Of a DNA stretch of 64,000 nucleotides, positions 29,457 through 63,945 are shown one piece after another (the first letter of the stretch is position 1; each line of letters begins with the position of its first letter). A program made the position numbers and the translations under genes. The stretch spans positions 1-64,000 of the IMG/VR virus record IMGVR_UViG_3300021964_009390, one strand, 5' to 3'. Below the pieces are notes generated by a model that made no database searches, was not told where the DNA came from, and saw only the letters and a list, made by a program, of their open reading frames with translations.

Positions 29457-31646
29457 TTAATTTTGTTCTAACTTCTTAATATACACTCCCCATACACAAT
29501 TTTCCAGGAGAGCTTCTCCTGCCCATTCCACGTCCTTTAAATTTAAAATATTTTCGAACCCAGACTCATGCCACTGCCACCGTCCGGAACCATAAATTCT
29601 ATCGTATGCCTCTTGGTTTCTAGCAAAATCATGCAACATCAATACATCCCCTTCTTCAGCTATAGGTGAGTAAGTCCCGAACTCTGCGTTTTTTGAATTA
29701 CCGTCTACGAGCCAGCAAGTTTTTTTATCTTGAGCTAGCTTCCGCAAATGCTCTATTGTCTTGGTATTAAAACAATCAAGAGGTTTAAATTTTATATTAT
29801 TAAATGTATCAAACATCTTTTGAGAGTGCCTGGGGAATGGGTCAATCGTATGTATCGGAGTTTGAGGACAAATAGTTGCCAAAAAGGCAGTCAGGCCCCC
29901 CTCCCCTGTACCTAGTTCAATAATTAAATCAAACTTGTTACGAGAAAAGTAATCATGGAAGGCGTGGTACGCTCCTGGATGTTGTTGTGATCGTAAACCT
30001 TTTAGGGAATCGCTCCACCCTCCTTCAAAACAAGGTCCGTTATATTCAGATTTGGATGTACGTAATAGTATGTCAAGCTCATCCGTACCAAGGTAAGTAT
30101 CTATTAGTCGTTGAAGTAAAAAGTCTTCCGGCATGATACCTTTTTGATGATGCCGGATTTGAGACGAATGTAGAGTTACTACAACTGTATCTTCGAGTAC
30201 AATATCGTCTAGCGGGATCGTTGCTGATTTGTATATGTCACTAAACGAGCCATGCCGGCTTTGCGCAAACTGAAGAGAGATTACATTCTCATCAATATAT
30301 TTTACTAAATTTCTATAACCGAGCTCTTTAATACCATATTTTGTAGGAGTGTTTAACAAATCTCCCCAGCCGATATGCAAGGACATAACAGCATTTACAG
30401 ATTCCATTACCTTTTTGAACACTTGAGACCTAGGCCTACATGCCATCGCGCAGATGTTAACGCTACCACACCCCGCATTTTCGAGAGGTTGAACCTGATC
30501 ATGTGTCCATGTATGGCTCATAATAGACTCGTACAGGTCTCCTACAACAAACATATCAGCGTCTAACCACATACCCCCATTCTCGTACAAGACCCTTTGC
30601 CGAGCGTAATCTGATTTAAATTCAACACATAGTGAGTCATATTCTTCTGGTATATCGTCAAACGTTGATTTTAACTTTTCAGTGTTCCACACTTCGAAGA
30701 CGCAATTAGAATTCTTTTCCATAGACTGTAAACATTTTTCAATGAAATACGGTTTTTCTCCCTCCCAAAATGTGAATAGTTTCCTTTCTTCGAAGAATCG
30801 CCAATCGTAACTGTCTAGTCTGTCAATAAGTGCGGTTCTTTCTTCTTCTGTGAATTCTTGATCAAACCTTTTCAAATGCAAATTCTCCATGATGAAATCA
30901 AAATACGTAGCCCCTGGATACAAAGGCCGGCCTGAGCCAGTATCGTTATTTTGAGTAGTGATTCCCTCAGATGTACATTGCAAATGGACATACGAAGGTT
31001 TACCTCTGTTAGGGTCTCCCCAATAATATACAAAACTATGGTCACCCATACCAACTGCTGGGTCTATACAGAGCATTTCAAATTTGGATGTCCATTGAGG
31101 ATGAGGGTGTTGCTTTTCCGCTTGCATGTTACCGAATCCATAATGGTCTAAAACGGATTTTTTGACTACAATACAACCTTCACAGTAATTGCGTATTGCG
31201 TTAATTTTAGGATACATCTCCAAATTGCTGTCTATTTGAAGCTGTTCTGTTGGCTTACAACCAAGATGTGTACCTTTATTCAACCACTTGACGGCATTGG
31301 ACAAATGCCACGGTAGGTAAATATCATCATCATCCCATATAGCGACGTATTCCGAATGCTGACCACCAAAACTGTCCACGTATGTAAGAGCCTTGTTATA
31401 TACATCCGAGATCGACTCAAACTCACCGGCGTTTATTAGACGTATGTTGTGTTGCTGTTTTAAAAATTCAGACAACTTTATTTCTACTCGGTGATTGTTA
31501 AAAATAATCAGCTCTTTATTAGGATAATCCTGTAACATAAAATACGATATAGCTGAACGTAATAACTCATATCGCCCCTTCGTCGCGCAAAGGCATGTCA
31601 CTTTAGGTACACCGTAAATGTATTCTGGTTCCGGCTTAACTTCCAT
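29457..31646 (-). CDS. Three-domain fusion: GT2 glycosyltransferase + GT32/capsular DxD glycosyltransferase + class I SAM methyltransferase
   Basis: N-terminus CATKGR...IWDDDDIYLP; middle FKSDYARQRVLYENGGMWLDAD; C-terminus IIELGTGEGG...LVDG...LMLHD. Confidence 0.8.
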   Translation of the reverse strand: MEVKPEPEYIYGVPKVTCLCATKGRYELLRSAISYFMLQDYPNKELIIFNNHRVEIKLSEFLKQQHNIRLINAGEFESISDVYNKALTYVDSFGGQHSEYVAIWDDDDIYLPWHLSNAVKWLNKGTHLGCKPTEQLQIDSNLEMYPKINAIRNYCEGCIVVKKSVLDHYGFGNMQAEKQHPHPQWTSKFEMLCIDPAVGMGDHSFVYYWGDPNRGKPSYVHLQCTSEGITTQNNDTGSGRPLYPGATYFDFIMENLHLKRFDQEFTEEERTALIDRLDSYDWRFFEERKLFTFWEGEKPYFIEKCLQSMEKNSNCVFEVWNTEKLKSTFDDIPEEYDSLCVEFKSDYARQRVLYENGGMWLDADMFVVGDLYESIMSHTWTHDQVQPLENAGCGSVNICAMACRPRSQVFKKVMESVNAVMSLHIGWGDLLNTPTKYGIKELGYRNLVKYIDENVISLQFAQSRHGSFSDIYKSATIPLDDIVLEDTVVVTLHSSQIRHHQKGIMPEDFLLQRLIDTYLGTDELDILLRTSKSEYNGPCFEGGWSDSLKGLRSQQHPGAYHAFHDYFSRNKFDLIIELGTGEGGLTAFLATICPQTPIHTIDPFPRHSQKMFDTFNNIKFKPLDCFNTKTIEHLRKLAQDKKTCWLVDGNSKNAEFGTYSPIAEEGDVLMLHDFARNQEAYDRIYGSGRWQWHESGFENILNLKDVEWAGEALLENCVWGVYIKKLEQN

Positions 31647-31681
31647 GAAGTTATTTATATACAGCTGTATATCTGTTCAAC

Positions 31682-32221
31682 TTATTGTTGAGCAGGCTGT
31701 TGCTGTTGCTGAGCAGGCTGTTGCTGTTGCTGAGCAGGCTGTTGCTGTTGCTGAGCAGGCTGTTGCTGAGCAGGCTGTTGCTGTTGCTGAGCAGGCTGTT
31801 TACCCAACTGCTGTTGAACTTGTTGTATCAGTTGCTCCACTTTGCCGATACGCTGATCTATTGCAGCAATTTTCTGAACGTTAGTGTCAATCTCTTGCTC
31901 TTGTGTTTGGTCTAGTTGATCAGCCGCTTGTTGCGCCTTCTCGATACCTTGTGCTTGTTGAGCATCCACCTCCGCTTCTTGTGAAGCTTGTTGTTCTGCG
32001 TCTTGCGCTTGTTGGTCTACTTGTCCTTGTAAATTGTCAATTTGTGTTCCTGCATCCTTACCTCGAGCGGCATCCACCGTGTCTTGTATTGCGGTGCTGA
32101 TTCCCCCGGTGGCTATATCTAAAGCATGCCCTCCTGCAGTCTTCGCGGCATTTTTCATGTTCTGCCAGTTAACCTCGTTAATTTTAACGTACTGTTTGTA
32201 AATATCATCAACTTTGCTCAT
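31682..32221 (-). CDS. Gln-rich late protein with a PAQQQQQ repeat tail
   Basis: TAAATA 5 nt upstream; coiled-coil-like Q/A-rich body. Confidence 0.75.
   Translation of the reverse strand: MSKVDDIYKQYVKINEVNWQNMKNAAKTAGGHALDIATGGISTAIQDTVDAARGKDAGTQIDNLQGQVDQQAQDAEQQASQEAEVDAQQAQGIEKAQQAADQLDQTQEQEIDTNVQKIAAIDQRIGKVEQLIQQVQQQLGKQPAQQQQQPAQQQPAQQQQQPAQQQQQPAQQQQQPAQQ
31690..31800. repeat. 21-bp tandem repeat GAGCAGGCTGTTGCTGTTGCT (4 full copies, one 15-bp copy, one partial copy)
   Basis: Read directly; encodes QQQQQPA on the minus strand. Confidence 0.95.
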
Positions 32222-32276
32222 GTTATTATTTATTTAGTTGCACCGGATAACAATATAATATATAATAAATAATTAC

Positions 32277-32912: not shown

Positions 32913-33653
32913 TTGAGTATATATATGGTTTGTTTTAAAAAACAAGTACGTAAGGTAAGTGTAGAACAACGCGGGGAATTTGCATATAGCTTAGGTAACA
33001 TAATAACATGGTCACTTACCCTCAAACCAGGGTACCGTCCGGTTGTGGACCAACATACGAGCAATTACCCTAACACACTGGCCAGCGATATAATAGAGTA
33101 TGCCAAAGACGACAATACACCTGGCCATCAAAACAGATTGAAAAATATCTACGAAAATATAATCAAACCAAAATTGAGTTATACAAGTAAAATATATGTA
33201 CATTTGAGACTAGGAGATTGTTCGATATCTAGAAGAGTTGTAGATAAGAACAAAATAACTTATGTGGAAAACCCTGTGAATACTACTCATTTTAAAAATA
33301 CTGTTATAGATATATACAAACACGACCAAACCACTTGTATCAATTTTGTTACTGGTGTTCATAATCATAAAGATTTAAAACATAATAAATATCTACAAAA
33401 AGGCCGACCTGGTCAAGGTTCATATGATAATATGGTTGAACAACTCGAAACACTAAAAACATTCTTAGAAGATAATTATATAACATATGATTTTTCTATT
33501 AACAACCACCCAGACGATGATTTTTTAAATATGGTTGGCTGTAAACAAGTGGTAACAACATATGGTAGTTTCGGTAAATATGTTAGAATGTTCCGCGCAT
33601 TAGGTGGTGCTAATGACGATATAAATTTATGTAACAAAAATGTGGAGCGCTAG
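32913..33653 (+). CDS. GT11-like (alpha-1,2-fucosyltransferase-like) protein
   Basis: YVHLRLGD and DDDFLNM...GSFG motifs. Confidence 0.5.
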   Translation: MSIYMVCFKKQVRKVSVEQRGEFAYSLGNIITWSLTLKPGYRPVVDQHTSNYPNTLASDIIEYAKDDNTPGHQNRLKNIYENIIKPKLSYTSKIYVHLRLGDCSISRRVVDKNKITYVENPVNTTHFKNTVIDIYKHDQTTCINFVTGVHNHKDLKHNKYLQKGRPGQGSYDNMVEQLETLKTFLEDNYITYDFSINNHPDDDFLNMVGCKQVVTTYGSFGKYVRMFRALGGANDDINLCNKNVER

Positions 33654-33691: not shown

Positions 33692-34483
33692 ATGTTCTAT
33701 TGCTTTGACGATTTAAATATAATTGTACATACACCACCAAAAAATGCGTGTACCACTGTAAAAGAATACATGTGGAACCAGCTACGCGTAAAGCATCCTG
33801 ACTTACCAAATCATCACCCACATGCGCGATCCATGGTGGAATACATGATAAGTGAACGTGCATGGGTTAGAGAGAAGGATATACCTGCTAGAATAAATGA
33901 TCGAGGGTATAAATTATATACAATATACAGAGACCCATACACCAGATTTTATAGCGCTTTACATCAAAAATTTATCGCTCATCACCCAGCTGGTAACAAA
34001 AATTTACTCCATCCGGAAACCCCTAGTCAAAAAAGAGGAGGGGAGTTTTACAACTGGTTTAAAAGTATACACGGGCAAGATATATCTAAGATAACAAATA
34101 AACAATTGATAGACTACCATTGTGGAACATATACTAGCATAGTAGACCCACATTTTACACCAATATTTAATAATGATATATACAATAACATAATCGATTA
34201 CAAAAACATTATTATATTAAATATTGATTCAAATTTAAATAAAAATTTGGATGAAATTTTTAAAGAGCGTACCACTACCTTTAAATTAAAAAGACATAAC
34301 ACAAGTACTTACAACACAAAATACCTGGCAGATTTCAATGAAAAAACATTTTTAGAAAACTGTATCGATGATAATAGATGTATAAACAAAAGCGAGTATT
34401 ACAAGAGCTCGGTACGTGAATCGTTCAAAATTGATTTTGATATGTACAACAAATTAGATAAGTTATCTATATATAGTACCTAA
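33692..34483 (+). CDS. Sulfotransferase family 2 protein
   Basis: 5'-PSB-like PKNACTTVK and 3'-PB-like RDPYTRFYSA. Confidence 0.75.
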   Translation: MFYCFDDLNIIVHTPPKNACTTVKEYMWNQLRVKHPDLPNHHPHARSMVEYMISERAWVREKDIPARINDRGYKLYTIYRDPYTRFYSALHQKFIAHHPAGNKNLLHPETPSQKRGGEFYNWFKSIHGQDISKITNKQLIDYHCGTYTSIVDPHFTPIFNNDIYNNIIDYKNIIILNIDSNLNKNLDEIFKERTTTFKLKRHNTSTYNTKYLADFNEKTFLENCIDDNRCINKSEYYKSSVRESFKIDFDMYNKLDKLSIYST

Positions 34484-35173
34484 TTTTTTTTGTTGCTTAG
34501 ACCAGTGTGTACCACCTCTTGTTATTGGGTATATCTTTATATATTTAATAATATCTTCTCTACATACTAGATTGATACTATGGTCTACTTTTAACTTGTC
34601 GATGTAAAATAGAAGGTTTTGTTTCCAATCAGTATCACTAGGGTAACCAATCAGTGAGGAGATATAATGCTGAATTACACCAGGCCCTGTACAGCTCCAA
34701 ACATTATTATGTTTTCTCTTTTCAATATTAACACATACATTACGCCATATTGTGGAGATATGTATATTTCTAGGTGTGGATATCAAAGGACTATTAGAAA
34801 TTCGAAACTTTCCCCGGGCATTAATTTTACAAACCAGTGTAATGTCGTACTCCGGAGCGATAAACAACTGTTTAATTTTTTTAAGATTACTGTGTATAAT
34901 TCGATGACTAGTATCCCAATAACTGCCCCCGTCAACCAAACATCTGACTATCCTAAACATATCCGACCGGGCGGCCGGTAATGTATCATGGAAATTTTCA
35001 AAATATTCACAAACTTCCGGAGACATGTTGTCACGTATGTATTCACTAGCAGTGTCTCTGTTATACAAAACATAGCTTTCACTCGAAACAATATTTTCCA
35101 TTGACTTAATATTAGGAGTTAGCCGTGGGTCTATATTAATTGTGTCCCAGTATTGAAATAATGTTTTTATCAT
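34463..35173 (-). CDS. GT32/OCH1-like DxD glycosyltransferase
   Basis: LFQYWD, AARSDMFR...GGSYWD, TGPG. Confidence 0.75.
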   Translation of the reverse strand: MIKTLFQYWDTINIDPRLTPNIKSMENIVSSESYVLYNRDTASEYIRDNMSPEVCEYFENFHDTLPAARSDMFRIVRCLVDGGSYWDTSHRIIHSNLKKIKQLFIAPEYDITLVCKINARGKFRISNSPLISTPRNIHISTIWRNVCVNIEKRKHNNVWSCTGPGVIQHYISSLIGYPSDTDWKQNLLFYIDKLKVDHSINLVCREDIIKYIKIYPITRGGTHWSKQQKKLGTIYR

Positions 35174-35190: not shown

Positions 35191-35961
35191 ATGGGAAAAT
35201 TACAACATGTATATGTAGCTACTGTATGTACCGGTAACCGATTAGAAGAGTTTAAATTGTTAAAACGGACATTAGAAAGATATCATCGTTGTACATGGTA
35301 TGTGACATGTGACACGTATAGTCACACGACCATCAAACAATATCATAATGTAGTTGCATTAGAGAAGCAGTTACAACCCGCTAGAAACACTGGAGAAAGC
35401 TTTCAAAACTTCACCGCGGTAGTTGAGAACAAGATGGAGAGCATGATACATGGTATAAACCAGCATGGTTGGTGCCTATTCTTGGATACCGATTTGATAT
35501 TTTTAAATAAACTAGACGGTGAGTTTACATCTTATATTAATAATGACACAAAACGGTTATTTGTAACTGATCACTATTCTTTAACACCACGAAAATACGG
35601 TAGATTCAACGCCGGAATGATCGCGATGAAAGATGTAGATACCGCTCGTCGATGGTCGCAATTGACATATGAGCTGTCATGCCCAGTAGGTCTAGAACAA
35701 AAACCAATTGAAAGTCTAGTACGTGAGAATAAACCCAACACCATTATCGCTGGTCCGCAATATAATTACGGGTGGTGGAGAGATAGGAACATAGATAATG
35801 CGCATAATGTTGTAGGAGGTCAATTCTGTATTAATAATAAACCGGTGGTAAACTTACATGTACATACAGATAAACTGTTGCAAAGAGCCCGGGAGTCTAG
35901 ATGGCTCGCTAAAATAAAAACCGACGTAAAAGAGTGTTCAAATTATCAAAATATATTATAA
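35191..35961 (+). CDS. GT-A fold nucleotide-sugar transferase
   Basis: LFLDTDLIF, FNAGMI, EQK..E, YNYGWW. Confidence 0.65.
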   Translation: MGKLQHVYVATVCTGNRLEEFKLLKRTLERYHRCTWYVTCDTYSHTTIKQYHNVVALEKQLQPARNTGESFQNFTAVVENKMESMIHGINQHGWCLFLDTDLIFLNKLDGEFTSYINNDTKRLFVTDHYSLTPRKYGRFNAGMIAMKDVDTARRWSQLTYELSCPVGLEQKPIESLVRENKPNTIIAGPQYNYGWWRDRNIDNAHNVVGGQFCINNKPVVNLHVHTDKLLQRARESRWLAKIKTDVKECSNYQNIL

Positions 35962-36698
35962 ACATACTTAGCAGTATTGTAACATATATTACTCACTTCA
36001 CTATCATTAAGCTTTATTTTTTTACAAATCTTATTCAATCTATCAAACTGTGTAATTTCATTAGAATATGGATAATCACTACCAAACATGATCTTGTTAG
36101 AAGGCATGTACCGTAAGAAATGTTTTACATCTTTCCAGATTGAACTACCTTTGAAATAACCTAATGTTAACGATAGGTCATAATACATATTACCAATTTT
36201 CCTCGTATGCATGAAGTAATCCAATATCTTCGACCCCCCAGCATGTGCTATAACAAACTTTTTATGTGGGTATCTCAATGCTAGCTTTATATTATGTTCT
36301 AGTGATGGTTGTATTGACAAATCGCACCAATCGTACCAGCCATCAATTATAATAGGAATCCTGTCCGGTATTATAGATATTATATCTGAAATAGTATCAT
36401 AGTCATGTGTACTAATCTGTTGAATTTTCGAATGTATTTTGGCACCTTGTATCTCACCTCGGTCTACCCTGTCTAAAAAGATTGATATATTATCCTCTGA
36501 TCGGAAATCGAATATACATGTAAGACTGTAACGTTTAGATGAATTATTGATAGTATCTCTGTACAATTCAAACAACTCTAGAAAATTGACTATCAGGTTA
36601 CCACCGGTGATATCAAGATTATAGTTATCAAAACCTACTACATTTTTTTCAAATACATCACCCTCTAGGTGTATATGACTATCAAAAATCATCGACAC
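35946..36698 (-). CDS. Amidohydrolase family 2 protein
   Basis: FDSHIH, GAKIHS, IAHAGG, YDLS, MFGSDYP. Confidence 0.85.
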   Translation of the reverse strand: MSMIFDSHIHLEGDVFEKNVVGFDNYNLDITGGNLIVNFLELFELYRDTINNSSKRYSLTCIFDFRSEDNISIFLDRVDRGEIQGAKIHSKIQQISTHDYDTISDIISIIPDRIPIIIDGWYDWCDLSIQPSLEHNIKLALRYPHKKFVIAHAGGSKILDYFMHTRKIGNMYYDLSLTLGYFKGSSIWKDVKHFLRYMPSNKIMFGSDYPYSNEITQFDRLNKICKKIKLNDSEVSNICYNTAKYVYNIF

Positions 36699-37740
36699 TT
36701 TCCTTTACAATCAACCACCCAGGTCTATGAGTTTTATCTACCACTGACATATTATCAAAGTTATCAGGTACAATATGACTATCGAGTACATCCACATACT
36801 TATTTTTAATATTATTAAATGATTGTATATCATTTACTTTAGGGTATAAAACAGTTACATTGTACGTACTATCAGTTTTGTTTATCGTCTTAAGCTCTCT
36901 AGCATATAACAGTTCATAAGGGGTAGGGGATATAAATTCCGGAAGAACTCTAGATGCGATATTACATCCACCGCCTCTACATGCAAAATCAATTAGATTG
37001 AAATTTCCGGAATCATTAACAACCCACTCTGAGTGAGTTAACCCGTTCTGCAAATTAGTGAAACTTACAAACATATCATTGTATTTTAAAATATGTTTAT
37101 ATTTAGAATTATTAGCAGTTGAGTAACTAATTTTATTCGCGACCGCAAATTGACTATGAGACTTCACACCTACAATAATAGAAGTATGTTCACCGTTCAT
37201 ACATACACCTTCAATTGTGATTTCAGTACCTTGCAGGAGTGGTTGTACTAATGAATCAGTAGTAATAACTACACTACCTGCAGGTTCAACTACATGTATG
37301 CTTTTACTATTGCTACCAATAACAGGTTTAACCACCATAGAATTGCTATTGCTATTTATATATTCAGTACCTCTCAATATTTTTTTTACTGAAGGTGTAG
37401 GTATATTATACTGCTTACATAGTCTATACATACTGTGCTTGTTACAATAATACTTTAATGTATTTGTCGATATATGAGGTAAATTATAATGACCGCTAAC
37501 AATACTGGCTGTTTGTGTTAAGTGATCTGATTGATCTGTAATGACACTATGTATGTCTATATTTTTTAAAAAATTTATAATACCCCGTATATCACAAGCA
37601 TCATGACATATCCATTGAAAATTATATCTAACATTTATCGGTCGATTTGGGGCGATGACTAATGTATTGTATTTGCTAGCAACATAGTTTATCAAGTCAA
37701 CCTGGCAGACCCCTGCGCCCAATACTACCACAGTACTCAT
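36682..37740 (-). CDS. ATP-grasp ligase
   Basis: VLGAG, NKHSM, VVKP..GSNSKSI, HSEW...IDFACRGGG. Confidence 0.8.
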   Translation of the reverse strand: MSTVVVLGAGVCQVDLINYVASKYNTLVIAPNRPINVRYNFQWICHDACDIRGIINFLKNIDIHSVITDQSDHLTQTASIVSGHYNLPHISTNTLKYYCNKHSMYRLCKQYNIPTPSVKKILRGTEYINSNSNSMVVKPVIGSNSKSIHVVEPAGSVVITTDSLVQPLLQGTEITIEGVCMNGEHTSIIVGVKSHSQFAVANKISYSTANNSKYKHILKYNDMFVSFTNLQNGLTHSEWVVNDSGNFNLIDFACRGGGCNIASRVLPEFISPTPYELLYARELKTINKTDSTYNVTVLYPKVNDIQSFNNIKNKYVDVLDSHIVPDNFDNMSVVDKTHRPGWLIVKESVDDF

Positions 37741-38318
37741 CTTGTTAAATTATAGAGCATCGAGTAATAATTATTGACCACTGGTTCAAAATATGTAACT
37801 TTAATATCACCAAAGTACTCGTCGTTCAAATAATCTCGACCGCCTGAACCGCTGATATATTCTCTACCATCTACTGCTCTTACAATATTTGCTAAAAGCT
37901 CAGACTTGTGCCCTTTAACGTTCAACTCACTAGCCATCACAATTGGAGTTTCAATACCCATCCTAACCATACACCATTTTATACTACTCATATTAATATC
38001 TACAAGCTTATCATACATGTATATGTCAGATATATCAGTTTTTAAATTTTGAAATATGGTCTGATTTATTTTTTTTCTCCAGATAACATCGGCTGATACA
38101 GTAACATCTTTAATAATCTTCCGGGTAGCTTTTTTTTCAACCGGAACAGTTATCCATTGCACCTTCCCGGACAACAACTTTATTTTGTTTCTATTTTGAA
38201 AATTATTTTTACAGAATTTAACATCATCTAATATTACAAATATATCTGCCAATTTTAACTTTTGGAAAAAACCTTCATATGGGAAATGTTCAGGCTGATG
38301 TATCGCAACTTTCATCAA
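37737..38318 (-). CDS. WbqC-like protein
   Basis: IHQPEHFPYEGFF.K....FVILDDVKF...FQNRNKI, YISGSGGRDY. Confidence 0.9.
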   Translation of the reverse strand: MMKVAIHQPEHFPYEGFFQKLKLADIFVILDDVKFCKNNFQNRNKIKLLSGKVQWITVPVEKKATRKIIKDVTVSADVIWRKKINQTIFQNLKTDISDIYMYDKLVDINMSSIKWCMVRMGIETPIVMASELNVKGHKSELLANIVRAVDGREYISGSGGRDYLNDEYFGDIKVTYFEPVVNNYYSMLYNLTR

Positions 38319-38959: not shown

Positions 38960-38989
38960 GTCGTATTATAGTATATATTGTAGTATGTT

Positions 38990-41795: not shown

Positions 41796-41808
41796 GTTTT
41801 ACTGTCTA

Positions 41809-43249: not shown

Positions 43250-43373
43250 TTTATTCTCCAAATTCATATCTTATCGCACATATTGATTTCTATTGACGTA
43301 CCACCACATCGAGGGATGTGAATAAAAATACATTTATGTTTATGACTTATCATGTATAATATTTACTCAAAAG

Positions 43374-46947: not shown

Positions 46948-46948
46948 T

Positions 46949-47602: not shown

Positions 47603-47619
47603 TTATTACAATTTGCAAT

Positions 47620-52874: not shown

Positions 52875-52887
52875 AATAAATAAGTAT

Positions 52888-54383: not shown

Positions 54384-54396
54384 AATAAATATATGT

Positions 54397-54918: not shown

Positions 54919-55538
54919 TAACAGACGCTAGATTGCATGAGCAACCTCATTGCGAAAAAGCAGTAGCCGACTACACACCCACATTGCAAGATGTGGCCAT
55001 ATTCGATCAGAACGGATATGACATGTGCCCGGTGGAGCTGGAATATGCAAAAGCGAACGGTTTCATACACAGCAATCATCGTGTGAGTCACATAGCGTTA
55101 AGACAGGAGTGGATGACACATGAACCGGTCACAATAGGAGCACACTTCAATCATTGCAATCTATTCGAGCGCAAAGGGTACACAGGAGAAGCTAGACAAC
55201 AGCTGCACACATGGAGCAAACACAACGCGCTTGTGTGGAAGATAATAAAAATTCGTCCAAAATGGGGATTAGACTTCAGTGTAGATTATGCAGACAACGA
55301 TGGTAATGTGTTCGAGGTGTTACACTGGGAATGGGACAGCTTCGACTACAACGAAGTGAGACAGAAGCGAGACAAATACGAACCTTTCTTGTTAAGTACA
55401 GACTGGGATGACGCGGCTAAACAATTGTTGAAACGTAAAGACGAATGGCATTCATTAGATTTCTTTGCACAAAGTGACTGGAAGTGTAAATACTTTGGAA
55501 TAGAACCAGAACAATTTAAAATGGTATTATGGCAATAG
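54903..55538 (+). CDS. Conserved phage hypothetical protein
   Basis: FDQNGYD, FERKGY and PKWGLDFSVDY recognised as T4-like accessory motifs. Confidence 0.6.
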   Translation: MQGLVVTDARLHEQPHCEKAVADYTPTLQDVAIFDQNGYDMCPVELEYAKANGFIHSNHRVSHIALRQEWMTHEPVTIGAHFNHCNLFERKGYTGEARQQLHTWSKHNALVWKIIKIRPKWGLDFSVDYADNDGNVFEVLHWEWDSFDYNEVRQKRDKYEPFLLSTDWDDAAKQLLKRKDEWHSLDFFAQSDWKCKYFGIEPEQFKMVLWQ

Positions 55539-55948
55539 AACAAGAACATCAAGACGAATCAATACGCCCATGGGGTCATTACGAGATCCTGTTGGATGAA
55601 GAGTATTGCAAAGTGAAACGTATATATGTGAAGCCCGGTCAACGTCTGAGTTATCAGTATCATCACAAGAGGCAGGAAGCATGGACCGTGGTGAGCGGAG
55701 TCGCTAGAATCACCTTGAACGGTAACACAAGCGATTATGAACCAGGTCAAACTGTGTTGATACCACTAGGTGCTAAACATCGCATGGCCAACCCAGCAGA
55801 AGATCAGGACATGATACTGATCGAGGTGCAAACGGGTACATATTTTGGTGAGGATGACATAGTGAGAGTAGAAGATGACTACGATCGTCCGAAGAAACAT
55901 GTCAATGTGTGGAAACCTAAATGGGAATGGACAGATGAGGACCTTTAA
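55529..55948 (+). CDS. Mannose-6-phosphate isomerase type II-like cupin
   Basis: RPWGHY, VKRIYVKPGQRLSYQYHHKRQEAW, IEVQTG.YFGEDDIVR. Confidence 0.88.
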   Translation: MAIEQEHQDESIRPWGHYEILLDEEYCKVKRIYVKPGQRLSYQYHHKRQEAWTVVSGVARITLNGNTSDYEPGQTVLIPLGAKHRMANPAEDQDMILIEVQTGTYFGEDDIVRVEDDYDRPKKHVNVWKPKWEWTDEDL

Positions 55949-57667: not shown

Positions 57668-58390
57668 ATGAGATCAAAAAAACATATTTTAGTTTTAGGT
57701 GACTCACATGCAAATAAGTTTTTTAGCTCTACCAAACTAGCAACCGGGGCCCAGAAACAACCGGATAGAATAATAAACGCTTTACAACCTGACTTTAGAT
57801 TCGATACCGTGGTCTGCCCGGGCGCGACTGCTCAGGGTGCAGTAAATCCTACATCCAAAACAAAAGCACTTGAAACATTTAAAAAGAAATTGAGTAAAAT
57901 AAATCCAGACGATTATGATTACATTGCAATTATGTTGGGTGAAGTAGATTGTGGTTTCGTAATTTGGTATCGTGCGGAAAAATACTCGATATCGGTTGAG
58001 GAACAATTGAATTTGTCGGTAAACAATCTGTTTGAATTTATTCGGAATGAAGTGCTTTTAAAGTTTAAACCAAAACAAGTTATCGTTATGGGAAGTGTTT
58101 TGCCTACCATAAAAGACGATCAAGATTGGGGTGAAGTTTGTCATCTTAGAAGTTCCGTAAAAGCAACTCAACTCGAAAGAACAAATTTGACACTAAGATA
58201 CAATTGTATATTGAAAGAAGAGTCGTGTAAACTAGGTTATAATTATATTGATATTACAGATGAGACAATCGATAAACATACAGGTTTAATTGGTGACAAA
58301 TACATAAATAGTAACGAATTTGACCACCACCTGCCTTTCAAAAAAACATGGAAGTTTTTTTATACCAAATTAATTAAATTAACAAAATGA
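57668..58390 (+). CDS. SGNH/GDSL-like hydrolase or acyltransferase
   Basis: LVLGDSH, G.TAQG, GEVDC, DHH. Confidence 0.65.
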   Translation: MRSKKHILVLGDSHANKFFSSTKLATGAQKQPDRIINALQPDFRFDTVVCPGATAQGAVNPTSKTKALETFKKKLSKINPDDYDYIAIMLGEVDCGFVIWYRAEKYSISVEEQLNLSVNNLFEFIRNEVLLKFKPKQVIVMGSVLPTIKDDQDWGEVCHLRSSVKATQLERTNLTLRYNCILKEESCKLGYNYIDITDETIDKHTGLIGDKYINSNEFDHHLPFKKTWKFFYTKLIKLTK

Positions 58391-58496: not shown

Positions 58497-58504
58497 TATA
58501 AATA
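58497..58504 (+). promoter_or_regulatory. Canonical T4-type late promoter TATAAATA upstream of DUF1501
   Basis: Exact match, 8 nt before the ATG. Confidence 0.6.
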
Positions 58505-61078: not shown

Positions 61079-63163
61079 ATGATTGACGAACATTTTCTCA
61101 CCAGTGTTGAAGTATTCACCAGCAAATGGTCTACATTCTGCAAAATACACAAAGTACCAAACGGGATATTGACATCAGAAAATTTCATGAGTTTTTGTGA
61201 CGCCACCGGGATTGAATATCATTCCCGGTTTGACATATGCACACAAGACCAGAAACTCATGCATTCGTTGATGTGTTACTTGCGTACAGACGAGTTACGA
61301 GACAAAACGAAAAACGTGAAGACCATCAGATCCACTGAAAATTTGGCTATAATGATGGAGGATCGAGTGTTACCACACCTGGAGTTCATGATTCGTAACA
61401 CTGTACATTTACTACCCAAAGATTTTGCTCACATGATCGTGTGTACTGACAAATCATACGATCAGATACGTGACATATGTGACAACATATGCGAGAACAT
61501 CATGGTGATGAGCTGCAAAGAGAGCTGTATAACACAGAACATATACAACAATTTGTTCATGAGCAAATCTTTTTGGAGCGGTATTGAATATGAAAACATA
61601 TTGGTGTATCAACAGGACACCTGTTTGTTCCGACCCGGGATCGCAAAGTTCATGCAATATGATTATGTAGGTGCACCGTGGCCTGGTATGAGCGATGACA
61701 ATGTGATAGGGGTGGGTAACGGTGGCTTGTCATTTCGCCGGCGGAGCAAAATGTTACAATGTTTAGATGTCGTAAAACCGCAAGATTTTGTATCCGGTCG
61801 CACCACCAGAGGTTACATGTTGAGGTGCAAATTAGATCATGTACCAGAGGATGTGTATTACAGTTCAACCATGATACTACATGGTGTGGGGAGAGTGGCT
61901 CCCCGAGCGGTGGCCAATCAATTTTCACAAGAGTGTGTGTTACATGACAATCCGTTTGGTGGTCATCAATACTGGCTAGGTCATGTACAATTGCATGATG
62001 AAAAACGTGGCAAGCTGTTGTTGATAGACGACAATTTCGCGTATGACTCGCAAGGTCAAGGCTTCAACCGCGCTAAAACTGTGGTGGAAATGCTATGCAA
62101 AATGTTCCATGTGACTTTCATGCCAACTAACTATCGACCATGTGATCATGATCGAATAGAACATTACCATACGTTGGGTGTGAATGTGGTGCTGGAGCGT
62201 CGCGATCATCATGGTATGAAAATATTTGATGTGGTGGGTGAACATATAAAGCAACATGCCGGTGAATACGATGTGATATATTTCAGCCGACCTCACAACT
62301 TTGGATATGTGATAGATTACTGCCGCGAGCATTCTCCATCTAGCAAAATAGTGTATGATGCAGAAGCGTTGTTTTACAAGCGTATACAAGCTCAATACAA
62401 CACCACCGGGCAGATCAGCATCTGGCCACCATGTGACACACCGTCACAGCAAGTGGTGGATCAAGAGAAGGCAAAAGAATTTGACATGTTGTCCAAAACG
62501 GACAATGTTATTGTTGTGTCAGATTCAGAACGTGAAAGTGTGGTCAAAAACGTACCGGCTTTGAAGGGTAAAGTTGCAGTGTATGGACATGCTATACCAC
62601 CTCGACCTACCGATAACAACTATCATGAGCGAGCGCACATGCTGTTTGTAGGTTCTTTCGGTAAGGATGACACACCCAATTCTGACGCCATGATACATTT
62701 TGTGAACAACATGTTTGACAAGATACATGAACGTACCGGTAGCAAATTGTACATCATAGGTACAAACCCAACCGAGACCATTTTGTCTCTGACCAGTGAC
62801 AAGGTGGAGGTTCTAGGTTATGTAGAGGACATAACACCGTACTACAATAATTGTCGATTGTTTGTGGCCCCACATCGCTTCGCCGGAGGTATACCATGGA
62901 AAATATCGGAATCCATGTCGAGAGGTTTACCGGTCGTCATCACAAAACTACTGGCCGATCAGTTGGGTATCGGGAGAGAATGTTGCGGTGTGGGTGATAA
63001 CGATACTCAATTCATAAACCAAGCGGTACAAATATACAACTACTCAACCCGGTGGGACAATTGTAGGAACAAAAGCTTACAATACATAAAAAACACACAT
63101 GACCCCATGACACATAGAAAGCAGCTACTAAACAGTATAAACAAGGCATTAAAAACACCATGA
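61079..63163 (+). CDS. DUF5672 domain fused to a GT4-like glycosyltransferase
   Basis: YDYVGAPW...VGNGGLSFR, PEDVYY, PFGGH; C-terminal LFVGSF...N.DA, VAPHRFAGG..K..E.M..GLPVV. Confidence 0.8.
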   Translation: MIDEHFLTSVEVFTSKWSTFCKIHKVPNGILTSENFMSFCDATGIEYHSRFDICTQDQKLMHSLMCYLRTDELRDKTKNVKTIRSTENLAIMMEDRVLPHLEFMIRNTVHLLPKDFAHMIVCTDKSYDQIRDICDNICENIMVMSCKESCITQNIYNNLFMSKSFWSGIEYENILVYQQDTCLFRPGIAKFMQYDYVGAPWPGMSDDNVIGVGNGGLSFRRRSKMLQCLDVVKPQDFVSGRTTRGYMLRCKLDHVPEDVYYSSTMILHGVGRVAPRAVANQFSQECVLHDNPFGGHQYWLGHVQLHDEKRGKLLLIDDNFAYDSQGQGFNRAKTVVEMLCKMFHVTFMPTNYRPCDHDRIEHYHTLGVNVVLERRDHHGMKIFDVVGEHIKQHAGEYDVIYFSRPHNFGYVIDYCREHSPSSKIVYDAEALFYKRIQAQYNTTGQISIWPPCDTPSQQVVDQEKAKEFDMLSKTDNVIVVSDSERESVVKNVPALKGKVAVYGHAIPPRPTDNNYHERAHMLFVGSFGKDDTPNSDAMIHFVNNMFDKIHERTGSKLYIIGTNPTETILSLTSDKVEVLGYVEDITPYYNNCRLFVAPHRFAGGIPWKISESMSRGLPVVITKLLADQLGIGRECCGVGDNDTQFINQAVQIYNYSTRWDNCRNKSLQYIKNTHDPMTHRKQLLNSINKALKTP

Positions 63164-63945
63164 AAAAATATAAAGACAACTTTTTAATTATGTGCGAGTC
63201 ACGGACCGGTAGTACCATGTTGAGTACTGCACTCTGGAACCATCCGCAGGTGTGCATGCATGGAGAGATATTGCAACCTCGGCAGTTCAATAAACAAAAA
63301 CGCGATGACAAATTAGAATTTTTCGGGCTGAGCTACGATACACCAGGAGCTTTGCTCGATCTGTTACGTGATGAGCTGGTGAATGATCCGGTAAAATATA
63401 TAAGCAGGTACGGTTTCTATACCGGTAGATACAAACGTGGAGGTTTCAAATTTAAATATGAAGAGATGTCATGTGGATTGTTTGATCCAGTATTAGAGTT
63501 TATAGTCACACATCCGGAGATCAAAATAATACATTTGACCCGGGACAATCTGTGGCACCGGTATAGATCTTCATATGTAGCCACAAAAATTACAAAACAA
63601 TACAACTCGGTAACAGACACGATATCAATCGATACTGACACTGACAAGGTCAAATTGAATATACAAGATATTGAATCGAGTTTCAAGCGGACAGTTCAAT
63701 GGCAAAGGAAATATAGAAACATGTTCAAACACCATGCGATGTTAAACATAACATACGAATCACTCCTGGCTGACCCGCAAGGAACTTTTGACCAAGTGAC
63801 CGGTTTCTTAAAAATATCCAACCAAAAATGGAAACCATGGACAAAGCAAGTACAACCAGTACAGGACGATGACATAATCCGAAACATGGATAAGATCAGA
63901 GAGCATTTCATTTCCAGTAAATACGGTGTATATTTCGATAAATAA
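63160..63945 (+). CDS. Sulfotransferase (Stf0/Sulfotransfer_3-like)
   Basis: SRTGSTML...LWNHPQV..HGE, IHLTR.N, YE.L. Confidence 0.8.
   Translation: MKKYKDNFLIMCESRTGSTMLSTALWNHPQVCMHGEILQPRQFNKQKRDDKLEFFGLSYDTPGALLDLLRDELVNDPVKYISRYGFYTGRYKRGGFKFKYEEMSCGLFDPVLEFIVTHPEIKIIHLTRDNLWHRYRSSYVATKITKQYNSVTDTISIDTDTDKVKLNIQDIESSFKRTVQWQRKYRNMFKHHAMLNITYESLLADPQGTFDQVTGFLKISNQKWKPWTKQVQPVQDDDIIRNMDKIREHFISSKYGVYFDK

What the first reader, a model, noticed from the sequence alone, without database searches (positions are those of the whole stretch)
29457..63945. Large glycan factory combining fucosyltransferases and four sulfotransferases
Seen: GT10, GT11-like, GT25, GT32, GT47-like, GT2 and GT4 enzymes, multi-domain GT fusions, four sulfotransferases (33692, 41166, 41809, 63160), methyltransferases, an SGNH protein and an M6P-isomerase cupin. 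At least one fusion has a canonical late promoter. Inference: the phage builds sulfated, fucosylated, methylated glycans on virions or on the host surface. With a PVC host (known specialists in sulfated polysaccharides), a speculative idea is that virions mimic a sulfated fucan food substrate, or that infected cells are re-coated for superinfection exclusion or grazer evasion.
Basis: partly seen in the sequence, partly recalled or inferred. Interest (0 to 1): 0.7.

Follow-up and report, generated by a model that had tools for sequence, protein, structure and literature searches.

The report
Phage-encoded sulfated glycan factory
A 222-kb T4-like marine/estuarine phage carries about 20 sugar-adding enzymes, 11 sulfate-adding enzymes and its own sugar-donor pathways, enough to build a complex sulfated, fucose-containing glycan, something so far only suspected for a few giant viruses of amoebae.

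Summary
Window 29457-63945 encodes GT10, GT25, GT2, GT32 and GT4 enzymes and two multi-domain fusions. It also encodes four sulfotransferases (three by Pfam, one by more sensitive evidence), a methyltransferase, a PMI cupin and a TATAAATA 5 nt before the start codon of one fusion. The GT11-like, GT47-like and SGNH calls are weak.

The window is the first 64 kb of a complete 222-kb T4-like phage. The whole genome has 11 sulfotransferases, about 20 GT genes, GDP-mannose dehydratase plus a fucose-synthase-like enzyme, a dTDP-4-formamido-quinovose pathway, an APS-kinase-like fusion and a pyrophosphatase.

No glycan enzyme has a membrane segment, and there is no initiating transferase, flippase, polymerase or exporter. 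One fusion is GT-GT-methyltransferase, like chlorovirus A064R. In related phages, sulfotransferases sit inside the head and packaging gene blocks.

The closest precedent is the Moumouvirus/Cotonvirus/Tupanvirus fibril cluster (sulfotransferase, APS kinase, papain-like protein, GT-D). I favour cytoplasmic glycosylation and sulfation of virion proteins (about 0.45) over host-surface remodelling (about 0.33). A Verrucomicrobiota host is suggested. Virion mimicry of fucoidan remains untested.

The parts
29457..31646 (-). 729-aa tri-domain enzyme: GT2 (DDDD at 104-107), GT32/Caps_synth (GGMWLDAD at 357-364) and a C-terminal CmcI-like class I methyltransferase (ELGTGEGG)
   Evidence: Pfam; motifs; PDB 2br3 CmcI at E 3e-4. 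Homologs at 51-68% identity stand alone among replication genes in related phages.
31652..31659 (-). TATAAATA late-type motif, 5 nt before the ATG of the fusion
   Evidence: The same motif lies 5-7 nt before the starts of gp17, gp25 and about 27 other genes.
31682..32221 (-). 179-aa Gln/Ala/Pro-repeat protein with the late-type motif; function unknown, possible acceptor or structural protein
   Evidence: 21/36-nt tandem repeat at 31685-31816.
32913..33653 (+). GT11-like (fucosyltransferase-superfamily) candidate; weak
   Evidence: PF01531 at E 0.012, 15 bits, below cut-off. VHLRLGD resembles the HxRRGD GDP-fucose motif.
33692..34483 (+). Sulfotransferase, divergent Sulfotransfer_2
34463..35173 (-). 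GT32-like candidate (DXD-region hit below cut-off)
   Evidence: PF04488 at 19 bits against a cut-off of 23.
35946..38959 (-). Four sugar-tailoring genes: Amidohydro_2, ATP-grasp ligase, WbqC-like, PIG-L-type de-N-acetylase
   Evidence: Pfam. WbqC scores 149 bits.
38990..39631 (-). GT25 glycosyltransferase
   Evidence: PF01755 at 56.6 bits.
39624..40268 (-). Exostosin/GT47-like C-terminal fragment; weak
   Evidence: PF03016 at 29.8 bits against a cut-off of 33.4.
40252..41157 (-). GT10 alpha1,3/4-fucosyltransferase-like enzyme
   Evidence: PF00852 at 69 bits; FENS...TEK motif; PDB 2nzw at E 4e-14. Nearest viral relatives are giant-virus MAGs at 37-40% identity.
41166..42393 (-). Two tandem Sulfotransfer_2 genes (41166-41795 and 41809-42393)
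   Evidence: Pfam; 39% identical to each other; PAPS motifs kept.
42401..43267 (-). DUF6492 protein with a DAD motif, first gene of the 10-gene minus-strand operon; likely a GT-A-like enzyme
   Evidence: PF20102 at 38.5 bits.
44376..44879 (-). Inorganic pyrophosphatase. It would pull sulfate adenylylation and NDP-sugar formation forward.
   Evidence: PF00719 at 154 bits. Homologs lie in 7 of 77 phage sulfotransferase loci.
46072..48934 (+). Four-gene block: GT2-like (weak), short DegT-type aminotransferase (217 aa), Methyltransf_24 and dTDP-4-amino-4,6-dideoxyglucose N-formyltransferase
   Evidence: NF005755 scores 305 bits against a cut-off of 238.
53415..54383 (-). dTDP-glucose 4,6-dehydratase (RmlB). 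The probable start is the ATG at 54383; the ORF runs open to 54614.
   Evidence: TIGR01181 at 432 bits against a cut-off of 365.
55529..55948 (+). Stand-alone cupin matching the mannose-6-phosphate isomerase C-terminal domain
   Evidence: PF01050 at 115 bits.
57668..58390 (+). Possible SGNH/GDSL esterase or acyltransferase (LVLGDSHANKF); weak
   Evidence: Sequence only; no Pfam or NCBIfam hit.
61079..63163 (+). 694-aa fusion of DUF5672 and GT4 (GT-B)
   Evidence: Pfam. Paralogs lie at genome positions 112566-114389 and 136253-138868.
63160..63945 (+). Sulfotransferase of the Sulfotransfer_3/1 type, overlapping the stop codon of the fusion by 4 nt
   Evidence: Pfam. It is the only PF13469 hit in the genome.

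Best explanation
The interval is the first and largest of four to five accessory islands of a T4-like jumbo phage. The others lie at genome positions 64-68, 92-101, 111.8-114.4 and 129.3-140.6 kb. Together they form a self-contained cytoplasmic machinery for glycosylation and sulfation.

Proposed mechanism:
1. Host GDP-mannose and dTDP-glucose are taken over. No nucleotidyltransferase is encoded.
2. Phage GMD and an Fcl-like enzyme convert GDP-mannose to GDP-L-fucose or a related 6-deoxyhexose.
3. Phage RmlB, a short DegT aminotransferase and a VioF-type formyltransferase convert dTDP-glucose to dTDP-4-formamido-4,6-dideoxyglucose.
4. About 20 soluble glycosyltransferases, several fused into multi-domain proteins, assemble the glycan.
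5. Methyltransferases, a deacetylase, an ATP-grasp ligase, a WbqC-like protein and perhaps an SGNH enzyme tailor it.
6. Eleven sulfotransferases, whose acceptor-side regions have diverged, sulfate it at several positions. They use PAPS supplied by the host, and perhaps topped up by the phage APS-kinase-like fusion and pyrophosphatase.

The phage encodes no lipid-carrier initiating enzyme, flippase, polymerase or exporter. I therefore infer that the acceptor is a phage protein made in the cytoplasm, and that the product is a strongly anionic glycan coat on the virion (capsid or fibres). This would be the phage counterpart of the autonomous virion glycosylation of chloroviruses and mimiviruses.

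Shown: gene content, intact motifs, soluble enzymes, synteny in relatives, and presence in independent samples. Inferred: the donor sugars, that sulfation occurs, and above all the acceptor.
For: Gene content:
-.
- Eleven sulfotransferases. In the eight aligned paralogs the 3'-PB RNP...S motif is kept in all, and the 5'-PSB loop is intact in five (K to R in three).
- GMD scores 548 bits, RmlB 432 bits and VioF 305 bits, all above the equivalog cut-offs. The Fcl-like enzyme matches full length.

No export route:
- No membrane segment in any GT or sulfotransferase, and no polytopic membrane protein in the islands.

Architecture:
- The GT-GT-methyltransferase fusion parallels PBCV-1 A064R (PMC9614988).
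- Its homologs stand alone among replication genes in related phages, so it works without a polysaccharide cluster.

Timing and synteny:
- The late-type ATAAATA motif precedes the fusion, the 871-aa multi-GT, a gene within the 92-101 kb sulfotransferase island and the APS-kinase-like gene. It also precedes gp17 and gp25.
- In relatives, a sulfotransferase lies between gp13-like and gp4-gp21-gp22-gp23. Two lie beside the terminase, and three are interleaved with GMD/Fcl.

Giant-virus precedent:
- The set of sulfotransferase, APS kinase, papain-like DUF1796 and GT-D-like enzyme recurs in Moumouvirus, Cotonvirus and Tupanvirus fibril clusters (PMC10117803).
- DUF1796 relatives lie in 12 of 77 phage sulfotransferase loci and in giant-virus MAGs next to sugar dehydratases.

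Other:
- The major capsid protein of this sublineage has about 35 extra Gly/Ser/Thr/Asn/Pro-rich loop residues.
- The island is contiguous with phage DNA in an assembled contig, and exact fragments occur in other marine samples.
Against: - There is no direct evidence for any glycan, any sulfate or any acceptor.
- Several families (GT25, WbqC, WcbI, RgpF, VioF) are typical of LPS and capsule pathways that act on lipid-linked intermediates.
- T4-like cyanophages such as S-SM2 carry 20-kb LPS-type clusters that are usually read as host-surface modifiers.
- The main 10-gene operon (GT10, GT25, two sulfotransferases) lacks the late-type motif.
- Insertion between structural genes is also typical of host-directed morons.
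- The transmembrane scan is a simple hydropathy filter.
- Three of the eight paralogous sulfotransferases have Arg instead of the PSB-loop Lys.
- The APS-kinase-like domain scores below curated cut-offs and has a shortened lid.
- Homologs of that fusion also occur in Xylella Sano/Salvo-type phages in which the search for this sulfotransferase family found no match.
- No RNA run was listed.
Confidence: 0.45

Rival explanations
1. Host-surface remodelling. The enzymes act on the host's own undecaprenyl-linked O-antigen, capsule or EPS intermediates at the inner face of the membrane. The host's flippases and exporters then display a new sulfated, fucosylated surface glycan during infection. This would block superinfection, stop progeny sticking to debris, or change grazing and aggregation.
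For: - LPS/CPS-type families are present: GT25, WbqC, WcbI, RgpF, VioF.
- T4-like cyanophage S-SM2 has a 20-kb sugar/LPS cluster.
- The main operon has no late-type motif, and sigma70-like hexamers lie in its upstream spacer.
- 15 of 151 genomes of the candidate host class carry the same sulfotransferase family, sometimes in tandem. Host-side sulfated glycans therefore probably exist.
- The islands are hypervariable between relatives and within populations, as expected for surface-interaction genes.
Against: - No initiating phosphoglycosyltransferase, flippase, polymerase, ligase or exporter is encoded, and no GtrA/GtrB-type membrane proteins.
- About 20 GTs and 11 sulfotransferases are far more than a modification needs. 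A wholly new polymer would still need a compatible host export route.
- The tri-domain fusion occurs alone in relatives.
- Sulfotransferases lie inside the head and packaging modules of relatives.
- The sigma70-like scan is not above chance: 94 found against 84 +/- 7.
Confidence: 0.33
2. A soluble or secreted sulfated glycoconjugate (glycolipid, oligosaccharide signal or cytoplasmic polymer) is made. It would manipulate host physiology or neighbouring cells, or act as a decoy. It would sit neither on virions nor on the regular surface polymer.
For: - All enzymes are soluble.
- Bacterial precedents exist for sulfated small glycoconjugates, such as NodH and Stf0-type sulfotransferases (own knowledge).
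- The structural search for 33692-34483 lists a NodH-like cluster.
Against: - No acyltransferase, lipid or export genes are evident.
- The number and diversity of GTs point to a large heteroglycan.
- Synteny with structural genes in relatives.
Confidence: 0.1
3. DNA hypermodification. Some of the GTs glycosylate modified bases in phage DNA, as in T4 and in the phages described by Pyle et al.
For: - The phage is T4-like.
- A QueF-like gene in the interval hints at base-modification chemistry.
- Phage GTs that hypermodify DNA are known (bioRxiv 10.1101/2023.12.21.572611, listed).
Against: - No thymidylate-synthase-family hydroxymethylase is encoded.
- GT10, GT25, GT32, GT61, GT90 and carbohydrate sulfotransferases are not DNA-GT families.
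- Twenty GTs and deoxy-amino-sugar pathways are not needed for DNA.
Confidence: 0.04
4. Artefact: the island is bacterial DNA misassembled into a phage contig, or a set of decaying genes.
For: - Several genes have their best cellular relatives in Verrucomicrobiota.
- This is a metagenome-assembled record.
Against: - GC content is 33-43% throughout, like the phage and unlike the 50-58% of most of the bacterial relatives.
- Phage late-type motifs occur inside the islands.
- Phage-type small ORFs are interleaved.
- A 14.9-kb contig spans the left junction with no differences, and exact fragments occur in other studies' samples.
- Related phage contigs share island segments in synteny with core genes.
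- Reading frames are intact and curated-cut-off matches are met.
Confidence: 0.02

Closest known systems
Fibril glycosylation gene clusters of Megavirinae: Moumouvirus australiensis ma457-ma468, Cotonvirus, Tupanvirus (Notaro et al. 2022, PMC10117803; Speciale et al. 2022, PMC9614988)
   Same: - The virus encodes nucleotide-sugar pathways for 4,6-dehydratase-derived amino sugars (viosamine in Mimivirus), plus single and multi-domain soluble GTs and methyltransferases.
- The unusual set of sulfotransferase, adenylyl-sulfate kinase, papain-like proteins and a GT-D-like GT is shared.
- Sulfation is predicted there but not yet shown.
   Different: - Those are viruses of amoebae with one sulfotransferase and a canonical bifunctional sulfurylase/kinase of 624-655 aa.
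- Here a tailed phage has 11 sulfotransferases, and only an APS-kinase-like domain fused to an NMNAT-like nucleotidyltransferase.
- The sugar carriers are dTDP and GDP rather than UDP.
- Shared ancestry of the clusters was not shown. Only the GT10 and DUF1796 proteins have giant-virus MAG relatives.
Chlorovirus PBCV-1 capsid N-glycan machinery: A064R, A118R GMD, A295L GMER
   Same: - A three-domain GT-GT-methyltransferase enzyme.
- Virus-encoded GMD plus epimerase/reductase making GDP-fucose.
- Cytoplasmic, lipid-carrier-independent glycosylation of the major capsid protein.
   Different: - There is no detectable sequence relationship to A064R in the PDB search.
- The domain families differ (GT2 and GT32 here).
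- PBCV-1 glycans are not sulfated.
Hypervariable LPS/sugar islands of T4-like cyanophages, e.g. Synechococcus phage S-SM2, 143.6-163.3 kb
   Same: - The same virus type (gp23 is 33% identical).
- A large accessory cluster of nucleotide-sugar enzymes and GTs lies between core modules.
   Different: - The S-SM2 annotation shows no sulfotransferases or APS kinase.
- S-SM2 has heptose-pathway genes that are absent here.
- The target of the cyanophage clusters is also unknown.
Mycobacteriophage virion O-glycosylation (Freeman et al. 2023; reference cited within PMC12619734, seen; mechanistic details are my own knowledge)
   Same: Phage-encoded GTs decorate capsid and tail-tube proteins in the cytoplasm.
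   Different: Only one to four GTs, no sugar-nucleotide pathways and no sulfation.
Single sulfotransferase genes in cultured jumbo or T4-like phages (Ralstonia phiRSL1, Stenotrophomonas DLP_6)
   Same: The same Sulfotransfer_2 family at 26-33% identity. Both phages also carry an APS-kinase-like gene.
   Different: One copy each, no fucose or viosamine pathways, and function unstudied.
Bacterial sulfated exopolysaccharide clusters, e.g. cyanobacterial synechan xss (own knowledge)
   Same: GTs combined with several cytoplasmic sulfotransferases.
   Different: Those clusters include Wzx/Wzy-type polymerisation and export components, which are absent here.

Membership tests
Autonomous virion glycosylation machinery (giant-virus type) | Virus-encoded nucleotide-sugar biosynthesis | tested here: met
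   RmlB 432 bits, VioF 305 bits and GMD 548 bits, all above cut-offs. The Fcl-like enzyme scores 217 bits full length, below the cut-off.
Autonomous virion glycosylation machinery (giant-virus type) | Soluble virus-encoded GTs, including multi-domain enzymes, independent of lipid-carrier or export machinery | tested here: met
   About 20 GT genes, including tri- and bi-domain fusions. No membrane segments and no polytopic proteins in the islands. The scan is a simple hydropathy filter.
Autonomous virion glycosylation machinery (giant-virus type) | Glycan demonstrated on virion proteins | not testable with these tools
   Needs virions. The only hints are Gly/Ser/Thr-rich capsid loops and synteny with head genes in relatives.
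Moumouvirus-type cluster with sulfate metabolism | Sulfotransferase, adenylyl-sulfate kinase, papain-like protein and GT-D-like GT together with sugar genes | tested here: met
   Sulfotransferases; APS-kinase-like 99860-100732; DUF1796 66022-66780; GT-D-like 134391-135305; compared with PMC10117803. Here they are spread over several islands rather than one block.
Carbohydrate sulfotransferase (Pfam PF03567 / PF13469) | 5'-PSB loop (PKxGxS/T) and 3'-PB motif (RNP..R..S) for PAPS binding | tested here: met
   Alignment A1 of 8 paralogs: R50, N51 and S58 are invariant. The PSB-loop Lys is present in 5 and replaced by Arg in 3. 33692-34483 has PKNACTT and RDPYTRFYS.
GT10 alpha1,3/4-fucosyltransferase | Family HMM above cut-off and the FxxxFENSxxxxYxTEK motif | tested here: met
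   69.3 bits against a cut-off of 23.9. FIISFENSSNSGYFTEKPWY is present. H. pylori FucT matches at E 4e-14. Donor specificity was not tested.
GT11 alpha1,2-fucosyltransferase | Family HMM above cut-off | tested here: not met
   15.3 bits against a cut-off of 23.9, covering only the C-terminal 65 residues. An HxRxGD-like motif is present, so 'fucosyltransferase-superfamily-like' remains possible.
PAPS synthase (ATP sulfurylase + APS kinase) | APS kinase domain | tested here: inconclusive
   Residues 7-88 match APS kinases at E 1e-13 and carry the LGF..DR.E..RR motif. The scores (49-52 bits) are far below the curated cut-offs, and the lid is about 20 residues shorter. The model's top 50 PDB folds are nearly all APS kinases, at pLDDT 66.
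PAPS synthase (ATP sulfurylase + APS kinase) | Sulfate adenylyltransferase (Sat or CysDN type) | tested here: not met
   No PF01747 or PF01507 match in the genome. The C-terminal domain of the fusion has NMNAT-type GRYQPFHKGH and ISATKIR motifs. Its substrate is unknown.
Wzx/Wzy- or ABC-dependent polysaccharide gene cluster | Initiating phosphoglycosyltransferase, flippase, polymerase or transporter, and export proteins | tested here: not met
   No polytopic membrane protein in or near the islands. The only 4-TM protein, 110539-111867, is a phage coiled-coil membrane protein.
Seroconversion modules of temperate phages (gtrABC, Oac) | GtrA flippase, GtrB bactoprenol GT and a membrane serotype-specific GT, or a membrane O-acetyltransferase | tested here: not met
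   No such membrane proteins. The genome is of the T4-like lytic type. Integrase was not searched for.
T4-type DNA glucosylation | dCMP/dUMP hydroxymethylase (thymidylate synthase family) supplying the acceptor base | tested here: not met
   No PF00303 match in the genome. The alpha- and beta-glucosyltransferase families were not searched for specifically.

The most novel reading that the evidence does not exclude
The virion is coated with a fucoidan-like, multiply sulfated fucose-rich glycan. This coat would be bound by the polysaccharide-capture machinery of its Verrucomicrobial host, a clade known for digesting sulfated algal glycans. The phage would thus be taken for food, the bacterial counterpart of mimivirus fibrils imitating bacterial surfaces to trigger uptake by amoebae. 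A corollary is that arrays of sulfotransferases, seen here in at least 56 other phage contigs, mark a widespread and undescribed class of sulfated virions in the sea.
Probability: 0.08. Interest if true: 0.92.

Novelty: new variant of a known kind. Interest (0 to 1): 0.72.

Why it matters
Virus-encoded glycosylation is established for giant viruses and, in a minimal form, for mycobacteriophages. Virus-encoded sulfation of glycans has only been suggested, from one sulfotransferase gene in a few mimivirids.

This genome, and the many uncultured phage contigs with 2-8 tandem sulfotransferases found here, suggest three things:
- Tailed phages can make heavily sulfated glycans themselves.
- If the product sits on virions, it would change how marine phage particles adsorb, aggregate, resist enzymes and are recognised by hosts and grazers. 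It would also add a viral source of sulfated polysaccharide to marine carbon and sulfur pools.
- 'cysC' auxiliary metabolic genes in viromes, usually read as sulfur assimilation, may instead supply PAPS for sulfation.

The enzymes are also a compact, diverse toolbox of soluble sulfotransferases and fucosyltransferases.

Tried and rejected
- Pfam at E <= 10 on 10 unannotated ORFs gave nothing beyond the weak GT11 hit.
- A PDB sequence search of 33692-34483 gave nothing useful.
- ATP sulfurylase, CysD, CysQ, NTP_transferase and thymidylate-synthase families were sought in the genome and not found.
- phmmer with S-SM2 gp55, gp33 and gp20 found no homolog. The late-transcription factors are therefore unidentified, and 'late promoter' rests on the motif and on its presence before gp17 and gp25.
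- The sigma70-type scan of 29-48 kb is not above chance: 94 found against 84 +/- 7.
- Five long relatives by capsid identity, including a complete 229.7-kb genome, have no Sulfotransfer_2. The trait is therefore not shared by the whole clade.
- A search for the gp23-like capsid protein in five complete sulfotransferase-rich phage genomes returned nothing, and the tool warns that this is uninformative.
- No RNA-seq run holding the GT10/sulfotransferase stretch was listed.
- The 442-aa 4-TM protein next to a sulfotransferase was tested as a possible flippase or polymerase and rejected.
- The AlphaFold model of the APS-kinase-like fusion was only moderate (pLDDT 66) and did not resolve the C-terminal domain.
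- The PDB search of the two GT domains of the fusion did not retrieve PBCV-1 A064R.
- The giant-virus MAG loci that share GT10 share nothing else with the phage.

Full report
**Context**

The window is the first 64 kb of a single 222,461-bp IMG/VR virus record that CheckV rates complete. GC content is 39%. It is a T4-like myovirus.
- A gp23-like major head protein lies at 4150-5706 (PHROG 138 at 278 bits). It is 33% identical to cyanomyovirus gp23.
- Mapping against Synechococcus phage S-SM2 recovers gp4, gp21, gp15, gp17, gp18, gp19, gp25, gp6, gp43, gp41, gp32, gp44, gp46/47, UvsX and UvsW. gp22 was identified by its PHROG match.
- More than 600 IMG/VR contigs carry a capsid protein of this type; the 80 best kept are 64-88% identical.
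- The DNA of 38000-43500 occurs in estuary and marine metagenomes from several studies, dated 2018 to 2025.

**Observation check**

Pfam scans of every ORF of at least 100 aa in 29457-63945 confirm most of the list above curated cut-offs:
- a GT2 plus GT32/Caps_synth fusion
- GT25 and GT10
- two Sulfotransfer_2 genes and a Sulfotransfer_3/1 gene
- a DUF5672 plus GT4 fusion
- a Methyltransf_24 and a PMI cupin

The fourth sulfotransferase (33692) is missed by hmmscan. It scores 26 bits in the six-frame family search. It has both PAPS-binding motifs. It matches a Sulfotransfer_2 cluster by language-model features (0.97) and by structure (TM 0.77).

The GT11-like, GT47-like, second GT32-like, GT2-like and SGNH assignments are below cut-off or rest on motifs only.

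TATAAATA lies 5 nt upstream of the ATG of the 729-aa fusion.

Catalytic signatures are intact where I could check them:
- GT10 has FENS...TEK.
- GT2 has DDDD, and GT32 has GGMWLDAD.
- The sulfotransferases keep the 3'-PB motif, and most keep the 5'-PSB loop intact (K to R in three of the eight aligned paralogs).

Three corrections or additions apply.
- The 729-aa protein has a third domain, a CmcI-like class I methyltransferase (ELGTGEGG; PDB 2br3 at E 3e-4).
- The SDR at 53415-54614 is dTDP-glucose 4,6-dehydratase. With a short DegT aminotransferase, a methyltransferase and a VioF-type formyltransferase (46949-48934), it forms a dTDP-4-formamido-4,6-dideoxyglucose route.
- Roughly half the ORFs of the interval are not glycan genes. 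These are the tmRNA, LOG, PSCyt2/PSD1, QueF-like, DUF2452, UvdE, DUF1501 and a dozen small acidic or basic ORFs.

**The system is much larger than the window**

A family search of the whole genome finds ten Sulfotransfer_2 genes:
- 33692, 41166 and 41809
- 64986 and 65595
- 93429, 94013, 95463 and 97609
- 111868

With the single Sulfotransfer_3 at 63160, this gives 11 sulfotransferases.

Further glycan genes lie in four more places.
- At 64-68 kb: GT4-like, DUF1796 and GT61.
- At 92-101 kb: GT90 and an APS-kinase-like fusion.
- At 111.8-114.4 kb: a DUF5672 protein.
- At 129.3-140.6 kb: two GT2_4, GMD (TIGR01472 at 548 bits), an Fcl-like SDR, GT-D-like, WcbI, an 871-aa multi-GT, RgpF and GT2.

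No glucose-1-phosphate or mannose-1-phosphate nucleotidyltransferase is encoded. The phage must therefore draw on host dTDP-glucose and GDP-mannose.

**PAPS supply**

The protein at 99860-100732 has an N-terminal domain with the APS-kinase signature (P-loop, NADAVR, DLGFxxxDRxExxRR, FEPP). It lacks about 20 lid residues and scores below curated cut-offs.

Its model's best PDB folds are almost all APS kinases (pLDDT only 66).

The C-terminal half is an NMNAT-type nucleotidyltransferase (GRYQPFHKGH, ISATKIR). No canonical ATP sulfurylase, CysD or CysQ is present.

The fusion is a large, mostly viral family. Homologs at 65-81% identity lie within 10 kb of sulfotransferase arrays in eight phage loci, but most of those may be relatives.

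In GenBank phages, 3 of the 5 records with this sulfotransferase family also have an APS-kinase-like gene. However, Xylella Sano/Salvo-type phages, in which the search for this sulfotransferase family found no match, have the fusion too.

An inorganic pyrophosphatase (44376-44879) recurs in 7 sulfotransferase loci. I treat phage-assisted PAPS supply as plausible, not shown.

**Where the glycan goes**

None of the GTs or sulfotransferases has a membrane segment. No initiating phosphoglycosyltransferase, flippase, polymerase or exporter candidate exists.

The GT-GT-methyltransferase architecture matches chlorovirus A064R, which finishes the capsid N-glycan in the cytoplasm (PMC9614988). Homologs of the phage fusion occur alone among gp41, gp32, gp61 and uvsX in related phages.

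The motif ATAAATA is 13-fold enriched upstream of genes. In 28 cases it sits exactly 5-7 nt before the start codon. It precedes these genes:
- core genes: gp17, gp25 and the gene before gp18
- glycan-island genes: the fusion, the 871-aa multi-GT, a gene within the 92-101 kb sulfotransferase island and the APS-kinase-like gene

It does not precede the 10-gene GT10/GT25/sulfotransferase operon.

Synteny in relatives:
- A sulfotransferase is wedged between gp13-like and gp4-gp21-gp22-gp23.
- Two sulfotransferases lie next to the terminase.
- Three are interleaved with GMD and Fcl.

The capsid protein of this sublineage has about 35 extra Gly/Ser/Thr/Asn/Pro-rich residues in two loops.

The fibril-glycan clusters of Moumouvirus australiensis, Cotonvirus and Tupanvirus contain a sulfotransferase, an adenylyl-sulfate kinase, papain-like proteins and a GT-D-type GT (PMC10117803). 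The same odd set is present here. The phage DUF1796 (papain-like) protein has relatives in 12 of 77 phage sulfotransferase loci and in giant-virus MAGs, in one of them next to sugar dehydratases.

These points favour virion glycosylation. None of them is direct evidence.

Against this reading, LPS/CPS-type families are present, and T4-like cyanophages carry comparable sugar islands that are usually thought to act on the host surface. In addition, 15 of 151 genomes of the candidate host class have the same sulfotransferase family.

**Variability and distribution**

Against a complete 229.7-kb relative (capsid 69% identical), almost nothing between 12.5 and 115 kb, or between 129 and 140.6 kb, is shared. 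Five long relatives have no Sulfotransfer_2.

Closer contigs share whole island segments at 54-88% identity.

Within populations, one variant replaces the methyltransferase domain of the fusion with 1467 other bases. Other contigs lack the fusion cassette altogether.

More than 180 IMG/VR stretches encode this sulfotransferase family, which has a nearly invariant C-terminal [10 protein letters not shown]...FGYEFGE tail. Of 77 loci examined, 56 have 2-8 copies within 20 kb. By contrast, only 5 of 50,697 GenBank phage records have even one.

Literature searches found sulfotransferases mentioned only as isolated auxiliary genes, and no description of phage sulfotransferase arrays.

**Host**

The Tat-signal DUF1501 protein and the PSCyt2/PSD1 protein belong to PVC-typical families. 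The best cellular relatives of the DUF1501 protein are marine Opitutia/Puniceicoccaceae MAGs at 49-58% identity.

This supports a Verrucomicrobiota host. It rests on one acquired gene, and most of these bacterial loci have 50-58% GC against 39% for the phage.

**Verdict**

The inference of a sulfated, fucosylated, methylated glycan is well founded at the level of gene content.

The acceptor is undecided. I put virion proteins at about 0.45, host surface polymers at about 0.33, and other products at about 0.1.

It is a new variant of a known kind, namely virus-encoded glycosylation. It has an unprecedented sulfation capacity for a phage and appears to be one case of a wider, undescribed pattern in uncultured marine phages.

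Noticed in passing
window 32277-32660 (+): A full-length tmRNA gene (Rfam RF00023 at 90 bits; ARAGORN tag peptide ending ...PALLAA) sits inside the glycan island. In metagenome contigs this stretch has higher depth and many variants, so it is shared by many related phages.
   Followed up: partly
genome-wide, e.g. window 31652-31659(-), 58497-58504(+), 12555-12561(+): ATAAATA lies within 50 nt upstream of 44 genes (3.3 expected). In 28 cases it sits exactly 5-7 nt before the start codon, which leaves no room for a Shine-Dalgarno leader. If it is the gp55-type late promoter, many late mRNAs would be leaderless or nearly so. No gp55 or gp33 homolog was detected with S-SM2 queries.
   Followed up: partly
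window 49004-51052 (+) and 58513-59781 (+): The phage carries PSCyt2/PSD1 (DUF1549/DUF1553) and DUF1501 proteins. Both are hallmark multi-copy families of Planctomycetes and Verrucomicrobia with unknown function. The DUF1501 copy has a twin-arginine signal (SRREFV) and a weak phosphodiesterase/sulfatase-superfamily hit. In a related contig (L244) the two genes are adjacent and lie near sulfotransferases.
   Followed up: partly
genome 99860-100732 (outside the window; L011:16860-17732): An APS-kinase-like plus NMNAT-like nucleotidyltransferase fusion belongs to a large, mostly viral and uncharacterised family. Viromics papers usually label such genes 'cysC'. Its association with sulfotransferases suggests a role in PAPS supply rather than sulfur assimilation.
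   Followed up: partly
genome 66022-66780 (L010:3022-3780): A DUF1796 'papain-like' protein co-occurs with sulfotransferases in 12 of 77 phage loci. It has relatives in giant-virus MAGs, in one of them next to sugar dehydratases. This parallels the papain-like proteins in Moumouvirus fibril clusters and suggests a glycan-related role rather than a protease role.
   Followed up: partly
alignment A1 (window 41166-42393 and six paralogs outside the window): The sulfotransferase paralogs are only about 25-55% identical in the N-terminal two thirds. They share an almost invariant 30-residue C-terminal tail ([31 protein letters not shown]), which is also conserved in more than 180 other phage contigs. 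It may be a common docking or oligomerisation element.
   Followed up: no
window 45290-46057, 59790-60215, 60516-61043 (also 52804-53418): Small acidic proteins share an N-terminal motif M-x-D-(K/R)-D-x-x-(L/K)-I-(W/F)-E-S-Y at residues 1-13. This may be a targeting or processing signal, reminiscent of T4 capsid-targeting sequences.
   Followed up: no
window 54301-54918 (+) and 56357-57604 (+): Two ORFs share a lysine-rich segment (GLW-x-NIN-x-K...GSKAYKAA-x-KAGDKLEATKES). The first overlaps the 5' extension of the RmlB ORF on the other strand.
   Followed up: no
window 1-139 and 161-205: The contig starts with 5.8 copies of a 24-bp tandem repeat, followed by 5 copies of a 9-bp repeat, just upstream of the gp13-like gene. 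This may be a packaging-related or terminal feature, or an assembly end effect.
   Followed up: no
window 4150-5706 (+): The major capsid protein of this sublineage has two expanded Gly/Ser/Thr/Asn/Pro-rich loops, about 35 residues more than in relatives that lack sulfotransferases. These are candidate surface-exposed glycosylation sites.
   Followed up: partly
window 29104-32275 and 29440-30102: Metagenome contigs from another study show two variants. In one, the methyltransferase domain of the tri-domain enzyme is replaced by 1467 unrelated bases. In others, position 29104 joins directly to the tmRNA start. This is cassette-level variation in the population.
   Followed up: partly
window 50991-51907 (+), 51894-52907 (-), 5766-8228 (-), 43408-44124 (+): A QueF-like reductase, DUF2452, a UvdE UV endonuclease, an 820-aa ClpB-like ATPase and a LOG-family protein are other unusual accessory genes of this phage. 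The QueF-like gene hints at 7-deazaguanine chemistry.
   Followed up: no
genome 94636-95364 (L011:11636-12364): An unannotated 242-aa protein in the sulfotransferase island, preceded by the late-type motif, has homologs next to sulfotransferases in two Verrucomicrobial genomes and two phage loci. It is therefore probably part of the sulfation system.
   Followed up: partly
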